DNA of 48,878 nt, counting the filler, from Bipalium vagum (taxonomy: Eukaryota): assembly GCA_037834085.1 (NCBI GenBank). It is 2 parts of 2 records of this genome, joined end to end, with 100 filler letters (N's around TTAATTAATTAA, not from the genome) between each part and the next. Parts side by side here need not be neighbours in the genome. Positions count along the whole stretch, not along the records: positions 27,857 to 48,878 come from JBBMKC010242941.1; 1 more part is not named here. One strand, written 5' to 3'. The first letter of the stretch is position 1; each line of letters starts with the position of its first letter. The notes beneath the pieces are model-generated. The model was not told where the DNA came from and did not search any database. It saw nothing but the letters and a program-made list of their open reading frames with translations. The position numbers and the translations under genes were made by a program. Positions 27,857 through 47,554 of this stretch are shown here, piece by piece.

Positions 27857-28158
27857 CAATGACGATTTGAAAGCACTGGTTGAGAGTGATCCACTTACCA
27901 CTGTTCGAGAAATTAGCCGTAAGGTAGGCGTTTCCGCTATGGCTGTTTCGAACCATCTTCGCCAATTAGGAAAGTCAAAGAAATTGGACAAATTGATTCC
28001 ACACAATTTTTTCGAATCGGGATAAATAAGCTTGTCGTTCGCTGGGAGTGTACAGTCTGGCGGATTCTATTTTGATATATAAAACTTTGTTTAAGCTGTC
28101 ATGTGTTCCTTTAAAGTTAGATGTTAAAAACCGCCATTTATTTCTTTACCACCTAACA
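27857..28158 (+). mobile_element. Mariner fragment (HTH region and right TIR)
   Basis: NDDLKALVESDPLTTVREISRKVGVSAMAVSNHLRQLGKSKKLDKLIPH; end AAAACCGCCATTTATTTCTTTACCACCTAA. Confidence 0.8.
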
Positions 28159-28556: not shown

Positions 28557-28835
28557 TCATCGTCCAAAATGGAAAGGTACATATGGTGCTCTTCTTCTCT
28601 GATATTGGCCAAAGGGAAAGTTCCTCATCTGGTGACCCTCTTGTGTGGATAAGACGTTCCTCAACCAATTAGTATCATGTCTCAAGTTTTCCGAAAACGT
28701 TTTGTAGTCTGTCAACAAATGAATTAAGGTGTAATCAAATATTAAATATAAAGTACCATCTTTATCGTATTCCGCGTTCCCATATGAAATAAGCATAGCT
28801 TGCAGGACAAGGACAAGTGCCAGAAATGTTTCCAT
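28557..28835 (-). CDS. Secreted neuropeptide precursor (exons 28835-28757 and 28708-28557; 76 aa), predicted product APYVPFHF-amide
   Basis: Hydrophobic signal peptide METFLALVLVLQAMLISYGNA. In-frame 48-nt GTACTT...TTGACAG intron at 28756-28709. C-terminus RRR-APYVPFHF-G-R-stop (convertase site plus amidation Gly). CTAAC...TTTTCAG acceptor 10 nt before the ATG; AATAAA about 50 nt after the stop. Confidence 0.8.
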   Translation of the reverse strand: METFLALVLVLQAMLISYGNAEYDKDGTLYLIFDYTLIHLLTDYKTFSENLRHDTNWLRNVLSTQEGHQMRNFPFGQYQRRRAPYVPFHFGR

Positions 28836-29479
28836 ATCAAAATGTCTGAAAATATAAAACCGTTAGAAATGTTCCACTACCGTAAAAGTCAAATATCGAA
28901 TGCGTTCTCTGATCCGATGACTTTTCCTCCACCTTCATCATTCAATTATGCCCTACACATTATGCACACCAAAGGGTTTTTGAACTCACCTCACCAAAAA
29001 AGCCTACAAATCCGCTCATTCCATCAATTGGCTGAAAGGCGACTTTATTTTTTGTTTAAATCAGATTTAAAAGGATAAGAAATAAATAAATAAATAAAAT
29101 AATTCTATTTTAAAAACAATTATTTGTTTAAATGTAATGGTTAATTAGAAGGAAGTTTCAGATCTCTCTATTATGGCCCAATAATTGAACCAACAATTAC
29201 CCTATTATATGAAACGTTAATTGGGAAAGCTGATAAAATAAAAGCGCTTTGCCACAATGGCAAAGGTAATTGAAGGCGACCATGCCACCAAATTGCCATC
29301 ACTTTTCAGTTGGCTTTATAATTGAGTACAAAATAAAATAAAATAATAAATAAATAAATAAAATGAAACTTGGAAACTGTTTCAGAAAAAATGTTTCAGG
29401 CTCTTTCAATATTTGAGGGCCTGAAAAATATGTTGTTTTAATCTGAACCATCGAAAACGAAAGGAGATCGTTCTTTGAT

Positions 29480-35137: not shown

Positions 35138-36289
35138 GATCCATGGATTCGATGTTGTTATTTTATGCTGGCCAGTTATTTTTATAAAATATTTTTATTT
35201 TATTTATTTATATTTTTAAAATATTTATTGATTTTACATTAACTGATTAAAAACGCTTAACATAAATAAATATAAATAAATAACACTAAAAAGAAATTGT
35301 CTTCAGGAAGTCTCGAAAAATTGTAAAAAGCACTTTTTGCAGTTTTTTGTTTAAATCGTTGAGATTTTAAAAATGGAAAAATAATGTGGAGACAAAAAAT
35401 TTCCAAATATTTTCAGTGGGTTTGTAAAACGTTACAAATTTGTTTCCTTTGAACAAGATTTCAGAAAGAAGCTGAGTATTTTCAATGAAAATAAATAAAT
35501 ATTATTAGGAAAATAAAATAATAACTTACTCAAGTTTTATTTTGCGATAAAATGAGCTGACGGTGATAAGCCACTGGAAATATATGAATGGAAAACAAAT
35601 TAAACTGTGGCAATATATAACGTTCATGTTTATTGGCTGAATTCTGGGCATCGCCTCCTCTCTGCTTACCTGCATTTCAGTGAGGCAGTGATGTTTCAAT
35701 GTTGGACTTTATTTCATATTTATATATGAAAAGAAGAGGGGTTCTCAGGGTTTGGTCTCAATACTGCAAAACCATTGGAAAAATATGATTGATTGAGAGG
35801 AAGGACGCCCATTGTTTTTTATTTGAAGTCGAAAAACTGATATTAAAAAAGGAAAGTTTAGACTTAAAAAACAGTAAATAATACATAATATTAAATATAA
35901 TATATATTATACCAAAGAATATCATATGATTAATGTGTGGAGTAATTGGAAAGTTTGTGGAATCAGATAGTTCAAGTGATTTTACTTTTATTAAATGACA
36001 TCATCGTATTCGACATTGATTTAATATTAATCATTTGAATAAATATAGAGAGTTTTTCATAAATATGTATACGAGTTTAAACAAATATAAATTAATCAAT
36101 TTATCAATAAACATGAATCATTTTTATATATTATTGTAGATAAATCACTGAGGAAATATAAATATTTTTTATAGATGTTTGGAAAAAGAAAATAAATTCG
36201 GTTGAAAATTGTTGATTATTTTTGCTTTAAGCGTGTATGCACATTTATGAAACACTGTTTATATTGATAAATTTGTTTTAAATTTAAAT

Positions 36290-37006
36290 ATTGTTTGTCT
36301 TCCTGATTTTTTGGCCCAACTCGAACAGTTCTTGACCACAAACGATGTAAAACATTTAAATAATATTCTGCAATAACACTTTGACATTTTAAAACAAATT
36401 CCTTAAGGACTATACATTTTGAATTATAAAAAGTAATAAGCATTGTCTTAATTTTTAAAAACGTAGATTTTTGGTTTCGGCTCATCTACTGACTTCCATT
36501 CACTACTTTGACGCTCGGTTTGTGGATAATATTTGAGACACCACGTCTCGTCACCAGTTATAATTGAGTCAATATAATCTGGATTGTTTGCCACATTGTT
36601 GAAGAAATCTTTACAAGATCCAACATGAGCAGCTGTTTGGTCTTCATTTAATTCATGTGGAACAAACTTGGCACAAACCTTTCTTTTACCCAAATCTTTC
36701 GTTAAATTGTCCAAAAGGTAAAGAAATTTGTATTTACTTCTTCTGCTAACATTCTCAGTCATTTTACCACCATACGTAATGATTTCCCGTACTTTTGCCA
36801 ACAAATGTAGACGATTTTCAGCATCCGGATGTCCAAGCGTTACATCGTTATTTAAATCATAACAAACATTTTTAAATCGTGTAACCCATGTAGAGATATG
36901 TGTATGAGACATGCAATCATCACCATTAACTTTTTGTAGCAATTCATATGTCTGTAAGTTTTTTCCCGATTTTAAACGAAAATTTAATATTTGCTCTTTG
37001 TTCCAT
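36290..37006 (-). mobile_element. Mariner transposase, 3'-truncated and frameshifted
   Basis: MEQRANIKF at 37006; KVCAKFVPHEL; IITGDETWCLKYYPQTERQSSEW; KTMLITFYNSKCIVLKEFV (ORFs 36448-36942 and 36216-36485). Confidence 0.9.
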
Positions 37007-37142: not shown

Positions 37143-39150
37143 CAAGTGATTTTCAACTGGGGTTCTTCGGAACCCAGAGGTCCCGCGAGGGAGAGTCAAG
37201 GATTCCACAAAAAATATCAAATTTTCAGAATTGAGTTTAAAAAAATCCTGAATAGTGATTTTATGAAGGTATAAGTCATTCTTTAATCAGTTAATACGTT
37301 ACGATACTTTATATTGCCAAAAAAACTCATTTTTAATCAGTGTTATTATATATATAGAATCAAAAAATTTGTTTTACTGCTTCAAATAATATATATTTAA
37401 TTTTATATATGTCAATGAAACTTATTGATTGGATCTATTTTCTTAAATTACCATTTTGATCGTGAACATAGTCAGATTTTTTAAAGTGTTTGTTGAAATA
37501 CGCTCGTAACATACGACAAAACTAAGGTTATGGAGCCGATTGAAGCTGCTACCATCAACACTACACCAACTCAACTGCAGTTGCCAAAAAATGAAACTGG
37601 CAATTGGCAGTTCAAAGTTCGTCAGTGCTGTGACAATTATCTAGCTCTGGGGTTCACTTGGACGGGTGATCCAGCCCTTAACCACTGTGTGTTGCTTGCG
37701 GCGAAGAATTTGCCAATAGTGCCAAGGAGCCAGCTAAACTTAAGCGGCACTTTACAAATAGAAATCCGGAGGTATCGAATAATAACGCACAGTACTTCCA
37801 CAGAACACTGTCCATGAATAAAAAGTAAATGGCTACGTTTGAGAAAAGGTTCAAGACAAATAAAAAAGTTCAAAAAGCAAGTTACGCTTTAGTGGAGATT
37901 TGATATGTAAATATTTTCAAGATAATTTTGGTATGAAAAATCAACATTAATGAAATAAATCTTTGGTGTTAATAATACTTTAATTTTCAATGCGTTTATT
38001 TATATGTGTTTTTGTAGAATAGTTATCAAGAAATGGTCTGGGGATGTTTTTCGAGTTTGGGTGTTGGAAATTTAGTCTTCCTAGATTGAATAATGCATAA
38101 GGAAGATTATTTGAAAATTTTAGAAGAAAATTTGTTGGAATCTGTGCAACACCTTGGTCTTCAGACTGACTTCATATTCCAGCATGACCGAGACCCAAAA
38201 CATACGGCCAAAATTATTACACATTGGCTTAATCAATCCGGTGTTAATGTCTTGAAATGGATTAGGCAATCACCGGACATGAACCCAATTGAAAATTTGC
38301 AGGTTTTTATGAAGAGAAAACTCAAAGGCAGAGAAATTTCTGAAAAAGATATGCTGAAAAAGTACATCTTGGAAGAATGGCAACAAATTAACCCAGATTT
38401 TTGCAAAAAATTGGTTACTTTTATGAATATGAGATGTAATATGATCATCAAGAATAGGGGTGGTCAATAAATTATTAAGAACAAAATTTTGATACAAATT
38501 TTTTGTTCGCTTATAATAAATGTATTCGTATGGTTAATTTTCGTATTACTCATTTTCGAACATTCAAAAATAATTTATGCTTACAATTCTAAAACAAATA
38601 TTTATATATTCTTATTCTTATTTTATATATCCGGGATAGCTATTATACTTGGAAACAATAGACTTTTATAAAAATGTTTTCTTTTTTAGTGAAGTTATTA
38701 TTTTTTTTATTTATATTATTATCGTACGGATAATTATTGGAGAATATGTACATGACGAGAAATTGTGAGGATTGTGTTTGGAGAGGATGCCGTATCAGAA
38801 ATCAATAAGATTCCGCTTTCAGATAACACGATAAGCAGGCGTATGTTCTCTCAAAAATTAAAAGTCGAGAGTTTTTGCAGTCCAGGTTGTGGAGAGCACA
38901 GATATCAGTGGTAAAGCGCAGCTGCTTGCGTTTGTTCGCTTTATGGACAAGGAAGTTGTCATGGAAGACTTTCTTTGCTGTAAGGAATTGCCGAAAACAA
39001 CAAAAAATCAAAATATTTGTGATATTTTGAATTCGAATTTGGAATCTTGCAAGTTGACTTGAGAAAACTGTGTGCATTTTTTACGGACAGGAAATGTCAA
39101 ATCCTTTGTCTCGCTGACGCAACGACCAAATCCCAATATTATAGTCACTC
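37143..39150 (+). mobile_element. hAT Buster/Charlie-type (ZBED5/SCAND3-like) transposon, decayed and interrupted
   Basis: Left end CAAGTGATTTTCAACTGGGG. BED-finger region VRQCCDNYLALGFTWTGD...CV..C and PAKLKRHF. Resumes after a Tc1 insert with IVRIVFGEDAVSEINKIPLSDNTISRR and ESTDISGKAQLLAFVRF. Confidence 0.85.
37900..38725 (+). mobile_element. Tc1 (DD34E) 3' fragment nested in the hAT element
   Basis: MVWGCFSSLGVGNLV (38033); FQHDRDPKH...QSPDMNPIE with exactly 34 residues between D and E (ORF 38093-38470). Boundaries approximate. Confidence 0.85.
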
Positions 39151-39919: not shown

Positions 39920-40370
39920 AAAATTGGCACATTGTTCCATTGTCCATCATACTGGTCATCTAAATGCGAAAACGTACCAAAAAAATCTGAATTTTGGCAC
40001 ATTCAATTTATTTATCAAGGACGTATAATTTTTCGTTTAAAAAATATTATTCATAAAATACAATTTTTTTATTTTTGAGTTCATTAAAATTCTGCACTAT
40101 TATATTAATTACTGTTTTATTTTAAATGAAAAACTTTATTGATTTGACATACCACCATACTCGCCTCAACTAAACCCAATCGAAGGGTTTTTCAGCAGCT
40201 TTATAAGTCACAAATATCATCCTTTATGAGAACCATTATAGATCGGGATGATTAAAAGAATTGATTACCCAAGCACTCATACACGAAGATATCGATTTAA
40301 GTGTGGTTATTTTCGCAACATGAGGAGGTTTATAGAAAAATCCTTGGCGAGGCAAGAATTTATTTAGTGT
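39920..40370 (+). mobile_element. IS630/Tc1-like transposase C-terminal fragment
   Basis: IPPYSPQLNPIEGFFS at about 40148-40196; ends RHMRRFIEKSLARQEFI*. Confidence 0.7.
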
Positions 40371-40699
40371 ACATTTCTACTCGTGTATTTGTTATGAAAT
40401 ATCTTTTTTCTATATATTTCTGAATATTTTTCTATATAATTCTGCTTAACCCTGTAACTAAATTTTAATTATTGATTCTAAATTTAATAATAATATTATT
40501 ATTATTAAAAATTTTGAGGTATTGTAAAACAAATCATGGTTTTATTATAAAGAAAAATTCCACAGTCTGATTAAACTAATTATAAAAAGCTAAAATCCGA
40601 GTCAAATTATATTATAACCCAATAAATCAATGTTATGTGATCATTAATCAGTTCAAATGTCGATTGTTAATTTGGATCAAGAGCTGCCTTAAGCGTGCC

Positions 40700-41298
40700 C
40701 TGTTCAATCCTGAAACCTCTTAAAGACGCATAATAATTTTAATTGCCAGAAACGTAAAAGAGATTATCAATGGGACTGGAAAGAAATCATGTATTATGAT
40801 TTGATCAAACAAAATAAAACAATCGATTCCAGTAAGTATTGCACACACAGCTCAATAAATTGAAGGCGGCAATCAAAAAAAGAGACCGGAATTGAGCAAT
40901 ATATATGGTGTAATTTTTCAACAAGACAACACGAGACCACATGTTTCCTTACCGATCCGACAAAATATTTTTGCAATTTTTGGCTGCAATCTTTGTTCTC
41001 CACCCACCTTACTCACCAGATCTGGCAGCATAAACATATTTTTATTTATTCCGATCCTTACAGAATTCTCTTTATGGAAAACATTCCAGTTCTTTAGAGG
41101 ATTGTCTAAAGCACATGAGTGAGTTCATAGATCAATGAATATTTCCAGAGAAATCCTGGAAGGAGGGGTTTTCAAATTATCTGGAAAAAGTCAATGATTT
41201 AAACAGTTCACATATTGTTGAGTAAGATTTTTATCAATAATAAAAAATCGATTTTGATTTCTTGTAAAACTACGAAAAGACTTTTTACTCAACCCAAC
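40700..41298 (+). mobile_element. Mariner 3' fragment with right TIR
   Basis: WDWKEIMYYDL; VIFQQDNTRPHVSL; PPYSPDLA; end AAAACTACGAAAAGACTTTTTACTCAACCCAA. Confidence 0.85.
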
Positions 41299-42744
41299 CT
41301 GATACGATAATATAATAATATAAATAATAATAAAATGCATAAAAATAACAATGGCAACAGTAGCAGTCTTGCTAATGACGAACATTTCTCTCACTTTCAT
41401 CACTTGAACAGTGAAAACGTATCGCAGCTTTCAAATTGCCGAAAGCAGTCGTTTGAGCCCTTTCCCAATCCATCCCGAATGAAATCGTTATTTAATTGAT
41501 GTGGCTCTAGAATGGGAAATGAAAGCAAAGCGATCGTTGGGAATTCCTGAGAGATGAAGCGAATACAGAATGGCGCCTTCCCTCTACTTTAAGACGTTAT
41601 CCGTTATCTGCCTGCACATTGATTCACTTATCAATGAATATTGCGTTCTTCGGGGTAAAAAAATTCAGCTCGCAAGAGAAGCAGAAGTCCTCAAGAACCA
41701 CAGTAAACCAACAAAATCGTCTAATTAACGAAAAAGAAAAGGAAATCATTTCCCAATAAAATCGGTTTTTGTCGAAGAGCTGACCCCTGAAACGGACGGT
41801 GAAGAGTAAAATCGGAGTGTTGCCAGGCTCAACAGAAACGACAAAATCGAACTGCTTCATTGCAGAATGTTTTCCTTTGACAATCTTTTCCAGCTCACAT
41901 TCTGCCCAAAGATAATACCAACACAAAAAAAATAATACTAATAAAATAATAATAATAATAATTTCTCATTTATTTAAATTGGAGGAAAAGTAAAACGGAA
42001 TGTTAAGTGCACTGGCAAATTGCTGGTTTCAATTTCCAATTAAAATCCCATCGCAACGCAAGATTATTTCGTCAATCTGGTCTTTCCTCTTTGCCATTCC
42101 ATACTTAAATTTTGATTAGGCAGAATTAAACAGGGGAAATTAAATGAAGATATTTAATGACATTGAATATTATTACCAAACCATCTCTCGGCTCCTTTCC
42201 AGAATTCCCACTTTCATCTCTGTTCCATGCGGGAGAACGGCATTTGCTATTTCATTAGTAAAATGGCCATTTCGATCGCCATGGCGATGTTGCGTTATTT
42301 TTATACATTTATATAATGGAATCAGTTTTTATTTTATTAATTTCATTGATGCCATTAATTTCTTTGCAAAAAAGGCAACTGTAAAGACAGGAAAAATCAA
42401 TTATATATTTATCTTTTCCCGTTAATGGTTCGGTATAAATAATGATGATTATAATAATAACAGTTGGTAACAACATCAGAAACCCTTTGTAAGCCCTGTG
42501 AGATGGGCTTTGGGGTGTCAAGGTTAATCCGTTTCATTTTTAATTAAACCAGAAATTTTAATCATACAAATTTTTTTTATTATCCAACAAAATTGAATAT
42601 TTTTAATTCTTAAATAAAATATAATTACTAAATATTAATAATTTAATAATAATATTAATAATTTAATAATAATAATTTAATAATAATAATAATTTAATCA
42701 TAATAATAATCATAATACCAATCAAAGATATTGATGATATTGAT

Positions 42745-42860
42745 TATGGATTAACGAATTTCTTCGAATCCAAAGATAGTAAATATTCCGAAAATGGTAT
42801 CGACAAGTTTGAAGAACGTTGGAAAGCGATGATTGATAACAATTGTGAATATATAATGAT
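42745..42860 (+). mobile_element. Mariner extreme C-terminal fragment
   Basis: LTNFFESKDSKYSENGIDKFEERWKAMIDNNCEYI. Confidence 0.75.
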
Positions 42861-42959
42861 AAGCTTGACGTTTAGAATAATAAAATAATAGGAATATATT
42901 CTCATTCTTTCAAATTTATTTCCGATGCACCTGATAATAATAATAATAATGAAGCATAC

Positions 42960-43470
42960 ATGGAGCATTCGTCGGAAAAACAAATTAAAAATATCAGTTG
43001 GATATGGTTTGAGTATGGCTTCACAAGCGTTGGTAAAGCGCTCAATATCGTCATGAATAAAAGAATTGATTTTTTGTTTACATTTCATAACTAACCCATT
43101 TTTCATCTCCAGTTATTAATCGTCTCAGAAGGAAATCTCAAAGGCTAATGCTTTGAGTTAAGTTAATTTCATTAAGATTATATGGAGTCCATAATACAAT
43201 TTTTCATATTCCCACAAGGCGATCAGTTTATATTGTTTTTCGGATTTTTTCATGAGAAACATGTAATGCACGGCAAGGACGTGGGGTTCATCTTTCAAAG
43301 AAAATTTGGCACCAATTTTGGCACTACCTAATTTTTTGCATTTGAGTAATATTTTTCCCTTTTTTGAAATAATAAAGCGAAATGTTGCGATACTGAAAAT
43401 TGTCATCTTCCATTCTTTTCAAGTAATTGCAAATAAAAATCTAAGAGATTGATTAAACAACGACAAATAT
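42960..43470 (-). mobile_element. Internally deleted mariner
   Basis: MEDDNFQYRNISLYYFKKGKNITQMQK; CQNW; FSLKDEP; LRRLITGDEKWVSY; HDD and PYS echoes. Confidence 0.8.
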
Positions 43471-43494
43471 ATCAACATATAAGACTGAAAGAAT

Positions 43495-43581
43495 TACAGT
43501 CAATCCCCGTTATAAAGGAGACATTGGTGAACTCGAAAAACATCTTTATAACAGGGTTCCTTATAACGGGGATGTTACGCA
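43495..43581. mobile_element. Miniature pogo/Tigger-like hairpin element
   Basis: TA-CAGTCA start; 13-bp perfect inverted repeat ATCCCCGTTATAA (43503-43515 and 43561-43573) plus an inner TTATAACAGGG copy; related motif at 48496. Confidence 0.6.
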
Positions 43582-43618
43582 ACACTAGAATGAGTACAGA
43601 CTGAGTACCACTGATTAC

Positions 43619-43666
43619 TTCTCCCACTGCTATTTGGTTATTTGATTGATAATTTAAACATAAACA
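43619..43666 (-). CDS. KNL2: KNL2-like gene, candidate exon after SANTA-2 (donor uncertain)
   Basis: ctttcag|CLCLNYQSNNQIAVGE, phase 0 matching the 43864 donor; candidate donors GAA|GTAATC or G|GTACTC. Confidence 0.4.
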
Positions 43667-43863
43667 CTGAAAGTACAAGGTCAAATATCAACATTACGTT
43701 TTAACCCAGCAAATAAATATAATAATATAAATATAATTGGAACATTTAAGTTGATCCGAAAATAATGATTACTTTCAAAATAAAAACACAATTACAAAAG
43801 ATTTTTTTCATTTTAAAGTGAAAGACGTTTGAAATCATTATTTATTTATTGAATCACATTTAC

Positions 43864-44242
43864 GCTATTTTCTTCATCATCAAAGTCCATCAAAAGAACC
43901 AATTCGATAATGGTTATAAACTCCTGCCAATATTGGGGGAACCCGTACAGAAAAAAAAGTATAAACGGTTCTGCAAGCCGACGAAACCGTTCGGCGTTGA
44001 CAATCTGTTCCCACTCCAATTTGCAAACGGGTCCCACTAATTTGACCAGCCCCGCCTTGGTTAAAACGTTTCTACCTCCACGAAACACTTCTACAATATC
44101 CGACGAAAATGGAACGACCATTCCGTCTGGATCATAAACATGTCCGTTTAAAACATAAGCATTGGCAGTTCCACTTTTCTTTCGGGGCACCCACAGAAAT
44201 ACCGGTTGATAATCGTCAATGGCCAACAGATTTCTGTTGAAT
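43864..44242 (-). CDS. KNL2: KNL2/MIS18BP1-like gene, exon encoding the second SANTA domain
   Basis: VFLWVPRKK...YVLNGHV...FSSDIVEVFRGGRNVLTKAGLVKLVGPV...FLYGFPQYWQEF fits SANTA (W...hxG...SSxI...LxTxxGxxxxLxG...FxxGFPxxW). Acceptor aacag|A is phase 2; donor AGC|GTAAAT. Confidence 0.75.
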
Positions 44243-44295
44243 CTGTTCGATTTTAAAATCAAAAAGGATAAAGAAAAAATCTGATAAAAACTAAC

Positions 44296-44327
44296 TTGTT
44301 CTTGGAAATTACGAACGACTGAATATT
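44296..44327 (-). CDS. KNL2: KNL2-like gene, 32-nt mini-exon
   Basis: gcttcag|NIQSFVISKN-AA|GTTAGT; phase 0 in, phase 2 out; 53-nt intron to 44242 restores the frame. Confidence 0.55.
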
Positions 44328-44625
44328 CTGAAGCAAAAAATATAATTAAGCTAAAATATATAATATATTAAGCTATTAATATAATTAATATTCAAAAAAA
44401 GTGAATTCTATGTTTCCTAGCAACAGTGACTTTTTAAGATGTTAGAATGTAAATTTTTGTAATTCGAAACTGATCGAAATATCATTTCAATCAGTCGATC
44501 GATAATTTACAACTGTACACGGGTTGGAGAGAGTCGATAGAGTTTTTCGGTCGAACGCTCCTCTGCACCAGATTTGAAACAAACAAAAAAGAATGTGGTA
44601 GGAAAATATCAAAAAAAGCAATTAC

Positions 44626-44694
44626 CGGAACTAAATTTGAAAATCGATTTTCAATCAAGGCATTGATTATTGTTTCTTTCCACCGCTTGTTTGC
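44626..44694 (-). CDS. KNL2: KNL2-like gene, exon 4
   Basis: caatag|ANKRWKETIINALIENRFSNLVP|GTAATT; 57-nt upstream intron; phase 0/0. Confidence 0.7.
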
Positions 44695-44751
44695 CTATTG
44701 ATTTATAAACGTTTTCAATGAAAATAACAGTGGATTGCATAACTCAAATAC

Positions 44752-44890
44752 CTGGATTTCGGCTGACAATTTCTGGAGGCACCTGATCATATTCAGTTCC
44801 TGCTGTGTTAGGACCTGAATACTGCTCTTGCACATGGGGTTTAAAATTTCCTGAAAGTCTGGATTGAATTCATTTTCAATGTCATCGCAC
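44752..44890 (-). CDS. KNL2: KNL2-like gene, exon 3
   Basis: CTAACTTAG|(R)CDDIENEFNPDFQEILNPMCKSSIQVLTQQELNMIRCLQKLSAEIQ|GTATTT; 51-nt upstream intron; phases fit. Confidence 0.75.
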
Positions 44891-44941
44891 CTAAGTTAGA
44901 TCGTCAATACTTTCGGTCATTTTTAATAATGCCGGTCTCAC

Positions 44942-45323
44942 CTAAAATGTGCACCCTTGATGAAAGTATTTAGATTATGAACTTCAATCAGCCATTCGTG
45001 TTTGAAACCCTCTGAGAAAAATTTTTGACAGAAAGTTTTAATATACTTTATTGCCTCGTTCTCATAGTAAATATCATACATCTCAAACGTTTTGATCGAT
45101 AATTTTCCTTCCAGTGAATACAGCTTTGACGGTGATCTCAAAATTCTACCACATTTCGATACACAGATTATCGGCTCGCTCATAAATTGTTCATTAGTAT
45201 CTAATTTAAATCCAATAACAGCATAATAACCACTGAAATACACTGGAAACCAATCTCGGATTCGAGTAAGACTAATATCATTCGATACCTTTTTACCAAG
45301 TATTTCACCATGAACATCCCATA
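44942..45323 (-). CDS. KNL2: KNL2/MIS18BP1-like gene, exon 2 encoding the first SANTA domain
   Basis: TRIRDWFPVYFSGYYAVIGFK...FMSEPIICVSKCGRILRSPSKLYSLEGKL...KFFSEGFKHEW fits the SANTA consensus. Donor AG|GTGAGA. Confidence 0.75.
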
Positions 45324-45379
45324 CTATTAATAATAGATTGTTAATATTTTGTTTTATTATTATTATTATTTAAAGGTAC

Positions 45380-45413
45380 CTATCACGTTGGATTTATTAA
45401 GATCATATTCCAT
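45380..45413 (-). CDS. KNL2: KNL2-like gene, exon 1
   Basis: ATG at 45413, MEYDLNKSNVI-G|GTACCT; 56-nt intron to taatag|TA keeps the frame. Confidence 0.65.
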
Positions 45414-47554
45414 GTCTTTATCGAAGGAAATTTTTATTGTTAATCCAAATTGATAATTATTAAAACAATTTATATTACTTAAGAGAGGTTAGATATGAAA
45501 TCTATCTTTTAATTGATATTTTAAAACGACACCGTCCAATATTTGTATGTTTAATGAAATTCAAATATAAATATCTCGATTTAATTGTTGCATTTACCGT
45601 TTGTCTTTATTTATAATTTCAATATTCAAAAAATATCAAAAATTTAAACTTATTTAATTTAATTAAAATTTTTCATTAAATAACTTAAAATAATAAAAAT
45701 TTTATTCAAAATTTTCAAAATTAATGATATTTTTATTCAAGGAGACATGCACCAATTTTTTAATACAGAAATTTTTTTTCTAATGTTCAGAATTATATAT
45801 TAAGAAATTAATACATATGATCACAATGAAGGCATTTTGTTCTTTTCTATATAATTTCTAAACAAAATTACAATTTCAAAATAATACATAAAATTAACCT
45901 TGAAATAAATCATTAAAACAACTTATAAATGAAAGTGTAATCTCATTTCAGCCGTTAAGGCTTCTGTGAAATGTGGCTTCAGATTCCATTTTTATAAACT
46001 TTAATAAATTTTTTTCAAAATAAAATTTTAGAACAGCAAAGTTTTTCTAAAATTTTAATAACAAATTTAATATTAAATATTTTCAAAGATTCTATTTACA
46101 TTGATTTAATTTTTTATTATATAATAATTATTTTAATTTCTTTAGAAATCTTATTATTAGCATGTTTTTTATATAAAATATATTTACATAAACCAGATAC
46201 CTGTTATTTTCAAGGTCACCTTTTGTTTATATAAATTAATCATATAATACCCAAATTACCTTATTATTTGTGTATTTTAAAATTAACTTTAAAAATTTTT
46301 AATTTTATAAATGTTAGTTAATTGATTTAAATAGTTAATTTAAACAACGGTTCTTCAGGCACCTCAACTATAAATCCCAAGGACCTATGCAACTAAAATA
46401 TTATAAAATGATAATCATTTTAACGAATACCCAGAAATGGCGACAAAACTAAGCGAAAGAACTGACTTTCTAATATTCAATGCTTAGAAGTAAAATACAG
46501 ACTTATCAAGGTAAACTTAAAGGTTATTTTAATATATTTTTATTTATAACATGATATTGGTATAGTAAAGAATAATTAAGCCGACTACTGGGATCAGGTT
46601 TGTGGCGTTTTGGCATGGCGTTTTCAGGGAGTAAGTGAACCCGAAGAGGACTTGGGGACCATGTTGTTGTTATATCACTGGAAGATTTTATGCTAACAAA
46701 CAAGATGAATATGATGACTCAATTTTATAATTCCTACTAAATAATCTCACCTAAAAAAACAACAGTGTGGTCCTAATCATGTATCACATCATCTATGGAT
46801 TGAAAAATCATTTTTAAAATACATTAACAGAACACTTAATTTAGTTTCTTCTGTTATTTAAAATCTCATGTTATCCTCCTTTACATCTATTATTTATCTT
46901 TTCTGTAGTAATATTTTAATTATCATTACTGTTTTCATTTAAGGTGTTGTCAAAGTACTCATATTTTAAGAAAAGATTTCCCACATTAATTCTTGTTTGC
47001 ATATTTTGGCATTATTACACTTTTACACGTATTCATAAGGCGGAGACGGAACCTCAAGTGATTCATCTAGCGTTTCACACTTGGGTTTTTTAACCATCAT
47101 TGTGAAAATCGTACTTTTATTTACCAAACGTTTCCATGGTAAATTTCTGTATTGACATAAATTTTTTTTCGAACTCTTCAATTTAAAACAAAAACGAAAG
47201 AATGAAACACAAAATATTATTTAACACCTGATATATTATCAACTTTAACAGTCACTGCGGAACTGTTATCTGCTAATCCCGGAAGCTTGCGATCTCTTTG
47301 TCTTATGTATTGGAATTACTACTCATGTTGGAATCGACGCACATTCTTAAAATTCAAAATAATGAAAATGATGAAAATGGAGATAAATTGATGATGAACC
47401 TTGATGTCCCCGTACTTAAAACTAATAAACTATATACTATTATCAAAGTGTTGTCTTTCTTCATTGCCAGCCTTTGTGAATTTTTTATGTATCTTTCGCG
47501 TGACTACATCCATTTTTGTATAATTAGAAAATAATATAATAAAAATAAATATAT

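What the first reader, a model, noticed from the sequence alone, without database searches (positions are those of the whole stretch)
43619..45413. KNL2/MIS18BP1-like centromere factor with two tandem, strongly diverged SANTA domains
Seen: a spliceable minus-strand gene (introns of 56, 51, 57 and 53 nt) with two separate blocks fitting the SANTA pattern, RDWFPV...VIGFK...SEPII...LYSLEG...FSEGFKHEW and LWVPR...LNGHV...SSDIV...TKAGLVKLVG...FLYGFPQYW, joined by a roughly 90-aa linker. Established: SANTA marks KNL2/M18BP1, the CENP-A loading licensing factor, which in vertebrates and plants has one SANTA plus a SANT/Myb and/or CENPC-k motif. Inference: a double-SANTA protein with no Myb or RSGR-type CENPC-k motif in the roughly 360 aa I could model suggests a rewired CENP-A deposition module or a specialised paralogue. 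Some invertebrate KNL2s may already have two SANTAs; I cannot check this.
Basis: partly seen in the sequence, partly recalled or inferred. Interest (0 to 1): 0.8.

Follow-up and report, generated by a model that had tools for sequence, protein, structure and literature searches.

The report
Compact gene with two SANTA-like domains
A small, intron-containing gene encodes a 350-residue protein whose C-terminal half folds like the SANTA domain of the centromere-licensing factor M18BP1/KNL2 and whose N-terminal half looks like a much-diverged second copy, with none of the other usual KNL2 modules; that architecture is unusual, but neither expression nor function has been shown.

Summary
The gene is real and conserved. 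Six minus-strand exons (45413-43846) join in frame through five GT-AG introns (56, 51, 57, 298, 53 nt) to give 350 codons. A 26%-GC soil-metagenome contig (L002) carries the same block 1 / linker / micro-exon / block 2 layout, with intron phases conserved. A third contig (L001) carries the 3' half.

Block 2 (last exon) is SANTA-like. Its AlphaFold model's best PDB match, and the only one at E<=1e-3, is the human M18BP1 SANTA crystal structure 9R6H. Its best ESM-Atlas match is a 100%-PF09133 cluster. A homologue scores 17.5 bits (E=0.006) against Pfam SANTA, below the 21-bit cut-off.

Block 1 gets no Pfam or fold support, because its model is poor. It does match block 2 in register: hhalign 25-26 against 12.0±2.5 for column shuffles (0 of 300 reach it). 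It also keeps both literature SANTA motifs (IRDW; FSEGFKHEW).

No Myb/SANT domain or CENPC-k motif is present, and the reading frame ends just after block 2 in three species.

There is no RNA evidence, the organism is unidentified, and centromere function is inferred from the domain alone.

Verdict: a new variant of a known kind, of moderate interest.

The parts
45380..45413 (-). Exon 1 (34 nt): ATG plus 11 codons, ends in phase 1
   Evidence: L002 has an equivalent 22-nt ATG mini-exon ending in the same phase.
44942..45323 (-). Exon 2 (382 nt): block 1, the diverged SANTA-like repeat. The domain spans about 44953-45270, from IRDWFPV to FSEGFKHEW.
   Evidence: Translation. L002 homologue at 40% identity, E=8e-24. 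hhalign against block 2 in register, P=7e-4, beating 300 of 300 column shuffles. No Pfam hit. AF2 model pLDDT 48 with no SANTA match.
44752..44890 (-). Exon 3 (139 nt): first part of the linker (..FQEILNP..LNMIRCLQK..)
   Evidence: Weakly conserved in L002 (33% identity, E=4e-5). No Pfam family.
44626..44694 (-). Exon 4 (69 nt): second part of the linker (ANKRWKETIINALIENRFSNLVP)
   Evidence: L001 has an exon of the same 69-nt length, '..KERSW..FSNLVP', followed by a GT donor.
44328..44625 (-). Intron 4 (298 nt, GTAATT...TTCAG).
   Evidence: L001 (80 nt) and L002 (45 nt) have an intron at the same place.
44296..44327 (-). Exon 5: a 32-nt micro-exon (NIQSFVISKN), ends in phase 2
   Evidence: Equivalent micro-exons of 32 nt in L002 (KISSFKLKSI) and 29 nt in L001 (IVSSFATQS), in the same phase.
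43846..44242 (-). Exon 6 (397 nt including the stop): block 2, the SANTA-fold domain (about 43882-44211, from VFLWVPR to FLYGFPQYWQE to TIIELVL). The stop is overlapped by AATAAA.
   Evidence: Homologues P0001 (1e-25) and P0002 (8e-20). P0002 scores Pfam SANTA E=0.006, 17.5 bits. Foldseek PDB top hit 9R6H, E=6.2e-4. VIA Z 5.9 over 100 residues. Atlas top hit is a PF09133 cluster, TM 0.51.

Best explanation
This is a genuine, conserved, six-exon protein-coding gene. Its 350-residue product consists of little more than two SANTA-type domains joined by a linker of about 100 residues.

The C-terminal domain is a recognisable SANTA fold: a beta-sandwich core followed by three helices. The N-terminal domain is an old internal duplicate that has diverged so far that only profile comparison and the two flanking SANTA motifs still show the relationship.

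SANTA is known only from M18BP1/KNL2, where it is indispensable for centromere recruitment. The most likely role (inferred, not shown) is therefore as a centromere/kinetochore-targeting factor derived from the KNL2 family that has lost, or never had, the Myb/SANT and CENPC-k modules.

A plausible mechanism (speculative): two SANTA domains in one chain give the divalent binding that human M18BP1 obtains only by dimerising on MIS18alpha/beta.
For: Gene model:
- Six exons, five GT-AG introns, 350 codons and no internal stop.
- The last exon has no ATG between the upstream stop and the domain, so it must be spliced to upstream exons.

Conservation:
- L002 has the same order of parts and the same intron phases, giving 329 codons.
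- L001 shares exon 4, the micro-exon and the last exon.
- P0003 is a further relative, 88% identical to P0002.

Block 2 is SANTA:
- 9R6H is the only PDB chain at E<=1e-3 (E=6.2e-4, probability 1.0).
- VIA Z 5.9, 100 residues aligned exactly on the SANTA part of the fusion construct.
- The Atlas top row is a 100%-PF09133 cluster, TM 0.51.
- Pfam SANTA at E=0.006-0.007 in the L002 homologue, covering profile positions 22-91 of 92.
- An exact FxxGFPxxW motif, as defined in PMC9210943.
- The predicted strand and helix order matches the published description of the fold.

Block 1 is related to block 2:
- hhalign gives 76 collinear columns, P=7e-4.
- The score of 25-26 compares with 12.0±2.5 (maximum 21.5) for column shuffles; 0 of 300 reach it.
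- In HMM-versus-sequence tests, 4 of 5 comparisons were reached by at most 2 of 1000 shuffles.
- MAFFT on its own places both blocks in one register with 10 invariant columns.
- Block 1 has IRDW and FSEGFKHEW 86 residues apart; block 2 has its W and GFPQYW 88 residues apart.

Valency idea: artificial dimerisation of a SANTA-containing M18BP1 fragment drives centromere recruitment (PMC12953894).
Against: - Neither window block gives any Pfam SANTA hit at E<=10, and the homologue's hit is below the gathering score.
- No sequence search, single or profile, finds 9R6H.
- The block 1 model is of low confidence (pLDDT 48), and its fold matches are unrelated small alpha/beta proteins.
- One of the five HMM tests was not significant.
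- The block 2 helices are poorly modelled (pLDDT 38-50). TM 0.39-0.51 is modest, and phage proteins score about as well in the Atlas.
- The surface Trp-His pair that human SANTA needs for localisation does not seem to be kept: the family has P/A-F before its invariant SS-I. This placement is by pattern only.
- There is no transcript evidence: the only run holding the locus is DNA.
- The function is inferred from domain identity alone.
Confidence: 0.6

Rival explanations
1. A single-SANTA protein. Only the C-terminal block is SANTA, and block 1 is an unrelated lineage-specific domain whose motif resemblance is coincidental or convergent.
For: Block 1 has no Pfam hit in either species. BLASTP between the two blocks is not significant. 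hhalign probability is only 27%. The block 1 model does not match SANTA. L002 block 1 lacks the GF of the C-terminal motif.
Against: The collinear profile match exceeds all 300 column shuffles. Four of five HMM tests give P<=0.002. MAFFT finds the same register without guidance, with 10 invariant columns. The W-to-W spacing is alike (86 versus 88 residues). The block 1 model is too poor to count as negative evidence.
Confidence: 0.22
2. An ordinary KNL2/M18BP1 orthologue whose Myb/SANT, CENPC-k or Mis18-binding exons lie outside the modelled region, so that 'SANTA only' is an annotation artefact.
For: There is no RNA evidence to fix the gene ends. A GTAAAT lies a few codons before the stop and could act as a donor.
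Against: The reading frame stops 3-15 residues after the conserved TIIELVL in three species, with no shared donor. AATAAA overlaps the stop. About 3.8 kb downstream and 2 kb upstream hold no CENPC-like or genuine Myb pattern. The tested downstream ORFs hit no family, and the only recognisable domains in the piece, several kb further on, are transposase remnants. Both the window and L002 begin with an ATG mini-exon in the same phase.
Confidence: 0.08
3. Not a functional host gene: a decaying pseudogene, or a gene carried by a mobile element or virus. SANTA-like beta-domains occur in phages, and the locus sits among transposon remnants.
For: The region is rich in transposon remnants and poor in genes. 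Phage clusters score TM 0.46-0.49 in the Atlas. Exhaustive search finds only two relatives. Three of four coding differences in a second DNA sample are non-synonymous.
Against: The 350-codon frame is intact across six exons. Intron positions and phases are conserved in contigs of 26%, 29% and 53% GC at 37-52% protein identity, which argues for long purifying selection on a spliced cellular gene. There is no second copy in the piece and no terminal repeats around the gene. Flanking sequence is not shared with the relatives.
Confidence: 0.08

Closest known systems
Human M18BP1 SANTA domain (crystal structure PDB 9R6H; Walstein et al. 2026, PMC12953894)
   Same: It is the best and only significant PDB fold match of block 2 (Foldseek E=6.2e-4; VIA Z 5.9 over 100 residues). 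The order of elements is the same: a beta core followed by three helices, the last one long. The C-terminal FxxGFPxxW motif is present.
   Different: About 13-16% identity, undetectable by sequence search. The Trp-His surface pair appears to be replaced. Human M18BP1 has 1132 residues with one SANTA, a SANT/Myb domain, a Mis18-binding N-terminus and pre- and post-SANTA motifs. This protein has 350 residues with two SANTA-like domains and nothing else recognisable.
Plant betaKNL2 (SANTA-containing KNL2 paralogue without a CENPC-k motif; PMC9210943, PMC13294675)
   Same: A KNL2-family protein that relies on SANTA without the CENPC-k motif. It is precedent for stripped-down SANTA proteins that still act in kinetochore assembly.
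   Different: It has one SANTA domain at the N-terminus and a longer C-terminal region, and it belongs to the plant lineage. No sequence relationship was detected here.
C. elegans KNL-2 (SANTA plus Myb; acts without Mis18 or a classical HJURP; PMC8351560)
   Same: An invertebrate example in which the CENP-A loading pathway around a SANTA protein has been rewired.
   Different: It has a single SANTA and a Myb domain and is a much larger protein. No detectable sequence similarity.
Phage proteins with SANTA-like beta-domains (noted in PMC12953894; Atlas rows 3-4)
   Same: Comparable structural similarity to the block 2 model (TM 0.46-0.49 by the query).
   Different: They are single small proteins of about 105-112 residues from Uroviricota, with no introns. 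They lack the Pfam SANTA signal and the GFPxxW motif evidence that tie block 2 to eukaryotic SANTA.

Membership tests
SANTA domain (Pfam PF09133) | Score at or above the Pfam gathering threshold (21 bits) | tested here: not met
   Window blocks 1 and 2 give no hit at E<=10. The block 2 homologue P0002/L002 scores 17.3-17.5 bits, E=0.006-0.007, over profile positions 22-91 of 92. L002 block 1 gives no SANTA hit.
SANTA domain (Pfam PF09133) | Fold, block 2: two packed beta-sheets followed by three helices, as in 9R6H | tested here: met
   Foldseek top hit 9R6H, E=6.2e-4, and the only hit at E<=1e-3. VIA Z 5.9, rmsd 5.0 Å, 100 residues aligned on the SANTA part. Atlas top row is a PF09133 cluster, TM 0.51. 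Model core pLDDT 72-85, helices low.
SANTA domain (Pfam PF09133) | Fold, block 1 | tested here: inconclusive
   The model comes from a two-sequence alignment and has pLDDT 48. No SANTA match with Foldseek or VIA-wide. Strand and helix order is compatible with block 2, and the profile similarity to block 2 is significant against shuffles.
SANTA domain (Pfam PF09133) | N-terminal VxLxDW and C-terminal FxxGFPxxW hydrophobic motifs (Zhang et al. 2006, as quoted in PMC9210943) | tested here: met
   Block 1 has IRDW and FSEGFKHEW (K in place of P). Block 2 has VFLW (partial) and FLYGFPQYW (exact). YGFPxxW is invariant in the three block 2 sequences. L002 block 1 keeps only F...W at the C-terminal motif.
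SANTA domain (Pfam PF09133) | Exposed Trp-His pair on beta4, needed for centromere localisation in human M18BP1 (PMC12953894) | tested here: inconclusive
   No residue-level structural alignment was available. By pattern, the invariant FSS-I of block 2 is preceded by P or A, and block 1 has FM-SE/VI-TE. The pair therefore seems not to be kept, but the correspondence rests on my recollection of the canonical WHSS motif.
KNL2 / M18BP1 | At least one SANTA domain | tested here: met
   Block 2, by fold.
KNL2 / M18BP1 | SANT/Myb domain (animals) | tested here: not met
   No Pfam Myb/SANT hit in any exon tested or in the neighbouring ORFs. The only W-W-F spacing match lies inside block 1 and is not a Myb domain. 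The frame ends right after block 2 in three species.
KNL2 / M18BP1 | CENPC-k (CENP-C-like) motif. It is present in many KNL2 proteins but absent in mammals and in plant betaKNL2, so it is not strictly defining. | tested here: not met
   No R[RK]SxR, RSGR or RxSxR..P..[YFW]W pattern in any minus-strand frame of 40000-47500.
KNL2 / M18BP1 | Binding to Mis18alpha/beta, centromere localisation, requirement for CENP-A loading | not testable with these tools
   These need experiments. The rest of the genome is also not available, so the presence of CENP-A, CENP-C and Mis18 could not be checked.
KNL2 / M18BP1 | Orthology by phylogeny, and being the only SANTA gene in the genome | not tested
   Only a 21-kb piece is available, and no canonical SANTA sequences could be retrieved with the capped searches.

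The most novel reading that the evidence does not exclude
A stand-alone tandem-SANTA protein family (SANTA, linker, SANTA; 330-350 residues; no Myb, no CENPC-k) that is intrinsically divalent. It would target centromeres without a MIS18alpha/beta dimerisation scaffold, making it a natural counterpart of the artificial M18BP1 dimers that bypass MIS18alpha/beta in human cells (PMC12953894).
Probability: 0.2. Interest if true: 0.7.

Novelty: new variant of a known kind. Interest (0 to 1): 0.5.

Why it matters
SANTA is the one M18BP1 element found indispensable for centromere recruitment in human cells, and its binding target is still unknown (PMC12953894). That work also showed that valency, meaning dimerisation of SANTA-containing fragments, controls recruitment.

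A natural protein that is essentially two SANTA domains on one chain would be a minimal, genetically encoded divalent module. It could help identify the SANTA ligand and show how CENP-A licensing is rewired in lineages that lack parts of the Mis18 complex.

The case also shows how fast this family drifts. An exhaustive HMMER search of 1.84 billion representative proteins found only two relatives, so such genes are easily missed in annotation.

Tried and rejected
Sequence searches that found nothing useful:
- Pfam on each window exon at E<=10.
- Word-index homologue searches with block 1, the block 2 profile and the block 1 profile. These returned nothing beyond P0001 and P0002.
- ESM-Atlas feature search for both blocks. 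Only sub-0.9 bacterial rows came back, treated as noise.
- PDB sequence searches with single blocks and with the A1 and A3 profiles. 9R6H never appeared.
- A metagenome scan with the block 2 profile, which re-found only L002.

Other dead ends:
- The RNA run search found only one DNA run. Its reads confirmed the sequence but say nothing on splicing.
- Rfam and tRNA scans of the piece were empty.

Considered and rejected:
- The extra exon after a 63-nt intron ('RSVRPKNS...') runs into a stop and is absent from the relatives.
- Reading block 2 as an SH2 or DNMT1-RFTS-like domain was dropped. Those matches are weak (Foldseek E>0.02; Z 2-4.4), cover only the beta core, and rank below 9R6H.
- The ferredoxin-like matches of block 1 (PurS, ribosomal proteins; Z<=4.8) were dropped because that model is of low confidence.

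Left out:
All searches were run exon by exon by reference, so no full-length fold or two-domain prediction was made.
- The organism could not be identified. The piece carries no marker gene, and run and organism names were coded.
Full report
**Scope.** Only places 27857-48878 of the window are genome, and all work was confined to that piece. Every search and fold used single exons by reference, so no full-length search or two-domain fold was run.

**1. Is the observation there?**

Reading the minus strand and checking phases by script gives six exons:
- E1 45413-45380
- E2 45323-44942
- E3 44890-44752
- E4 44694-44626
- E5 44327-44296
- E6 44242-43846, stop included

There are five GT-AG introns of 56, 51, 57, 298 and 53 nt, and 350 codons with no internal stop.

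An alternative exon reachable through a 63-nt intron after E4 runs into a stop and has no counterpart in the relatives. The stop codon is overlapped by AATAAA.

The last exon has no ATG between the upstream stop and the start of the domain, so it cannot be a gene on its own.

**2. Is it a real, conserved gene?**

Exhaustive phmmer of block 2 against 1.84 billion representative proteins found only two relatives:
- P0001: 114 aa, E=1e-25, 52% identity.
- P0002: 106 aa, E=8e-20, 39% identity.

Both are prokaryote-style gene calls on short eukaryotic contigs:
- L001: Logan SRR33002330, 978 bp, 53% GC.
- L002: JGI soil metagenome 3300031718, 3186 bp, 26% GC.

A fourth relative, P0003 (ENA), is 88% identical to P0002.

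tblastn shows that L002 carries the whole arrangement on one strand:
- Block 1 at 534-842 (40% identity, E=8e-24).
- Linker at 926-1024.
- Block 2 at 1282-1605 (37% identity, E=1e-27).

A parallel model of L002 gives five exons, 329 residues and introns of 42-47 nt. It has the same ATG mini-exon in phase 1, the same phase-2 junction after block 1, a 32-nt micro-exon, and a phase-2 junction into the last exon. L001 shares a 69-nt exon 4 (..FSNLVP), a 29-nt micro-exon and the last exon.

Intron positions conserved across contigs of 26%, 29% and 53% GC, at 37-52% protein identity, are strong evidence for a spliced cellular gene under purifying selection. Flanking sequence is not shared, and the piece holds no second copy.

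There is no expression evidence. The only public run holding the locus is DNA. It gives an unspliced 2518-nt contig with six substitutions: three non-synonymous, one synonymous and two in an intron.

**3. Is block 2 a SANTA domain?**

Direct Pfam says no for the window sequence at E<=10. The L002/P0002 homologue hits PF09133 at E=0.006-0.007 (17.3-17.5 bits; gathering score 21), covering profile positions 22-91 of 92.

An AlphaFold2 model from the three-sequence alignment has a mean pLDDT of 58.8. The beta core is at 72-85 and the helices are weak.

[quoted passage not shown] It is the only hit at E<=1e-3. VIA-align gives Z 5.9, rmsd 5.0 Å and 100 residues aligned. Model residues 15-138 align on chain residues 246-357, which is the SANTA part of the EGFP-SANTA-nanobody fusion. 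The next hits are at Z<=4.4: DIM2 and DNMT1 RFTS beta-barrels, and SH2 domains.

The ESM-Atlas shape search ranks first a cluster whose members are 100% PF09133 (TM 0.51, 101 residues aligned). Two phage clusters follow at TM 0.46-0.49. This fits the published remark that phages have SANTA-like beta-domains (PMC12953894).

The predicted element order is five long strands followed by three helices, the last one long. [quoted passage not shown]

The C-terminal SANTA motif FxxGFPxxW (Zhang et al. 2006, as quoted in PMC9210943) is exact in block 2 (FLYGFPQYW), and YGFPxxW is invariant in the family.

I take block 2 as a SANTA-fold domain that is too diverged for the Pfam threshold.

**4. Is block 1 a second SANTA?**

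Direct tests fail or are uninformative:
- No Pfam hit in either species.
- BLASTP against block 2 is not significant.
- The two-sequence AlphaFold model is poor (pLDDT 48), and its matches are generic small alpha/beta folds.

Indirect tests are positive:
P=7e-4, probability 27%.
- The score of 25-26 exceeds all 300 column-shuffled controls (mean 12.0, sd 2.5, maximum 21.5). A reversed control scores 12.
- In HMM-versus-sequence tests with 1000 shuffles each, four of five comparisons were reached by at most 2 shuffles. One, the block 1 HMM against window block 2, was not significant.
- MAFFT, given the five domain sequences without guidance, puts them in the same register with ten invariant columns: W7, P9, Y19, G23, I39, G46, L58, G60, F87, W95.
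- Block 1 carries both literature motifs, IRDW (xLxDW with I for L) and FSEGFKHEW (FxxGFPxxW with K for P), 86 residues apart. The corresponding spacing in block 2 is 88 residues.
- In L002 the C-terminal motif of block 1 has decayed to F...W, which shows how far this repeat has drifted.

I put the probability that block 1 is a diverged SANTA duplicate at about 0.7-0.75.

**5. What is not there?**

- No Myb/SANT hit in any exon tested or in the neighbouring ORFs.
- No CENP-C-like motif (R[RK]SxR, RSGR, or RxSxR..P..[YFW]W) in any minus-strand frame of 40000-47500.
- The frame ends 3-15 residues after the conserved TIIELVL in all three species.

By pattern, the Trp-His surface pair that human SANTA needs for localisation (PMC12953894) seems to be replaced: P/A-F precedes the invariant SS-I in block 2. 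This correspondence rests on my memory of the canonical WHSS motif and was not verified by a residue-level structural alignment.

**6. How it most likely works.**

Shown:
- A conserved spliced gene.
- A SANTA-fold C-terminal domain.
- An N-terminal domain related to it.
- No other known module.

[quoted passage not shown] The protein is therefore most likely a KNL2-family derivative that binds centromeric or kinetochore chromatin.

Speculative: in human cells a pre-SANTA plus SANTA fragment localises robustly only when dimerised artificially, and dimerisation bypasses MIS18alpha/beta. A tandem SANTA would carry that divalency in one chain.

Plant betaKNL2, which has SANTA but no CENPC-k (PMC9210943), is precedent for reduced KNL2 proteins that still function.

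**7. Membership versus resemblance.**

Membership in the SANTA fold class is met for block 2. The Pfam threshold is not met. Membership in KNL2/M18BP1 as an orthologue is not established:
- Myb is absent.
- CENPC-k is absent.
- Mis18 binding and localisation cannot be tested here.
- The rest of the genome is not available.

The full-text library holds no paper that mentions two or tandem SANTA domains. I could not query InterPro architectures, so 'first tandem SANTA' cannot be claimed.

**8. Organism.**

Unidentified. The piece is about 29% GC, is littered with mariner, Tc1 and hAT-like remnants, and has introns of 51-57 nt. The relatives come from a soil metagenome and an unnamed sequencing run. 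An invertebrate animal is likely, but an early-diverging fungus or another soil eukaryote is not excluded.

**Verdict.** This is a new variant of a known kind. Interest is moderate (0.5): it links directly to the 2026 valency model and the unknown SANTA ligand, but block 1, expression, taxon and function all remain open.

Noticed in passing
window 36216-37005 (-), 27858-28022 (+), 43158-43420 (-), 40859-41119 (+): Decayed mariner-type transposase fragments. The stretch 36451-37005 hits HTH_48 (E=2e-4) and continues in another frame at 36219-36485. The other three were recognised by eye only, from Mos1-like 'YYFKKGKN' and 'QQDNTRPH' motifs; Pfam gave nothing for two of them (43161-43418 and 40859-41119).
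   Followed up: partly
window 38090-38467 (+) and 38862-39059 (+): A Tc1-like DDE_3 transposase fragment (E=2e-5), with a weak DUF4371/hAT-like fragment (E=0.009) beside it. The 21-kb piece has no other recognisable host gene.
   Followed up: partly
window 43503-43573: A 13-nt perfect inverted repeat (ATCCCCGTTATAA / TTATAACGGGGAT, 45 nt apart), plus a third imperfect copy, about 270 nt downstream of the gene's stop. It could be a MITE-like end or a hairpin. Its meaning is unknown.
   Followed up: no
window 44171, 44175, 44615, 44617, 44694, 45061: A DNA contig from the only public run holding the locus differs at six positions. Codons 242 (S to C), 243 (G to E) and 186 (A to S) change, codon 99 is synonymous, and two differences are in the intron. 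Coding polymorphism therefore sits in poorly conserved loop and linker positions.
   Followed up: yes
L001 (978 bp) versus L002 and the window: The family spans very different base compositions (53% GC in L001, 26-29% in L002 and the window) while keeping intron positions. L002 introns are only 42-47 nt. In L002 a possible 33-nt in-frame mini-intron lies where the window has its 57-nt intron 3.
   Followed up: partly
window 28560-28862 (-): An ORF that begins with a signal-peptide-like stretch (METFLALVLVLQAMLISYGNAE...). It has no significant Pfam family and may be a fragment of a retroelement or of a secreted protein.
   Followed up: no
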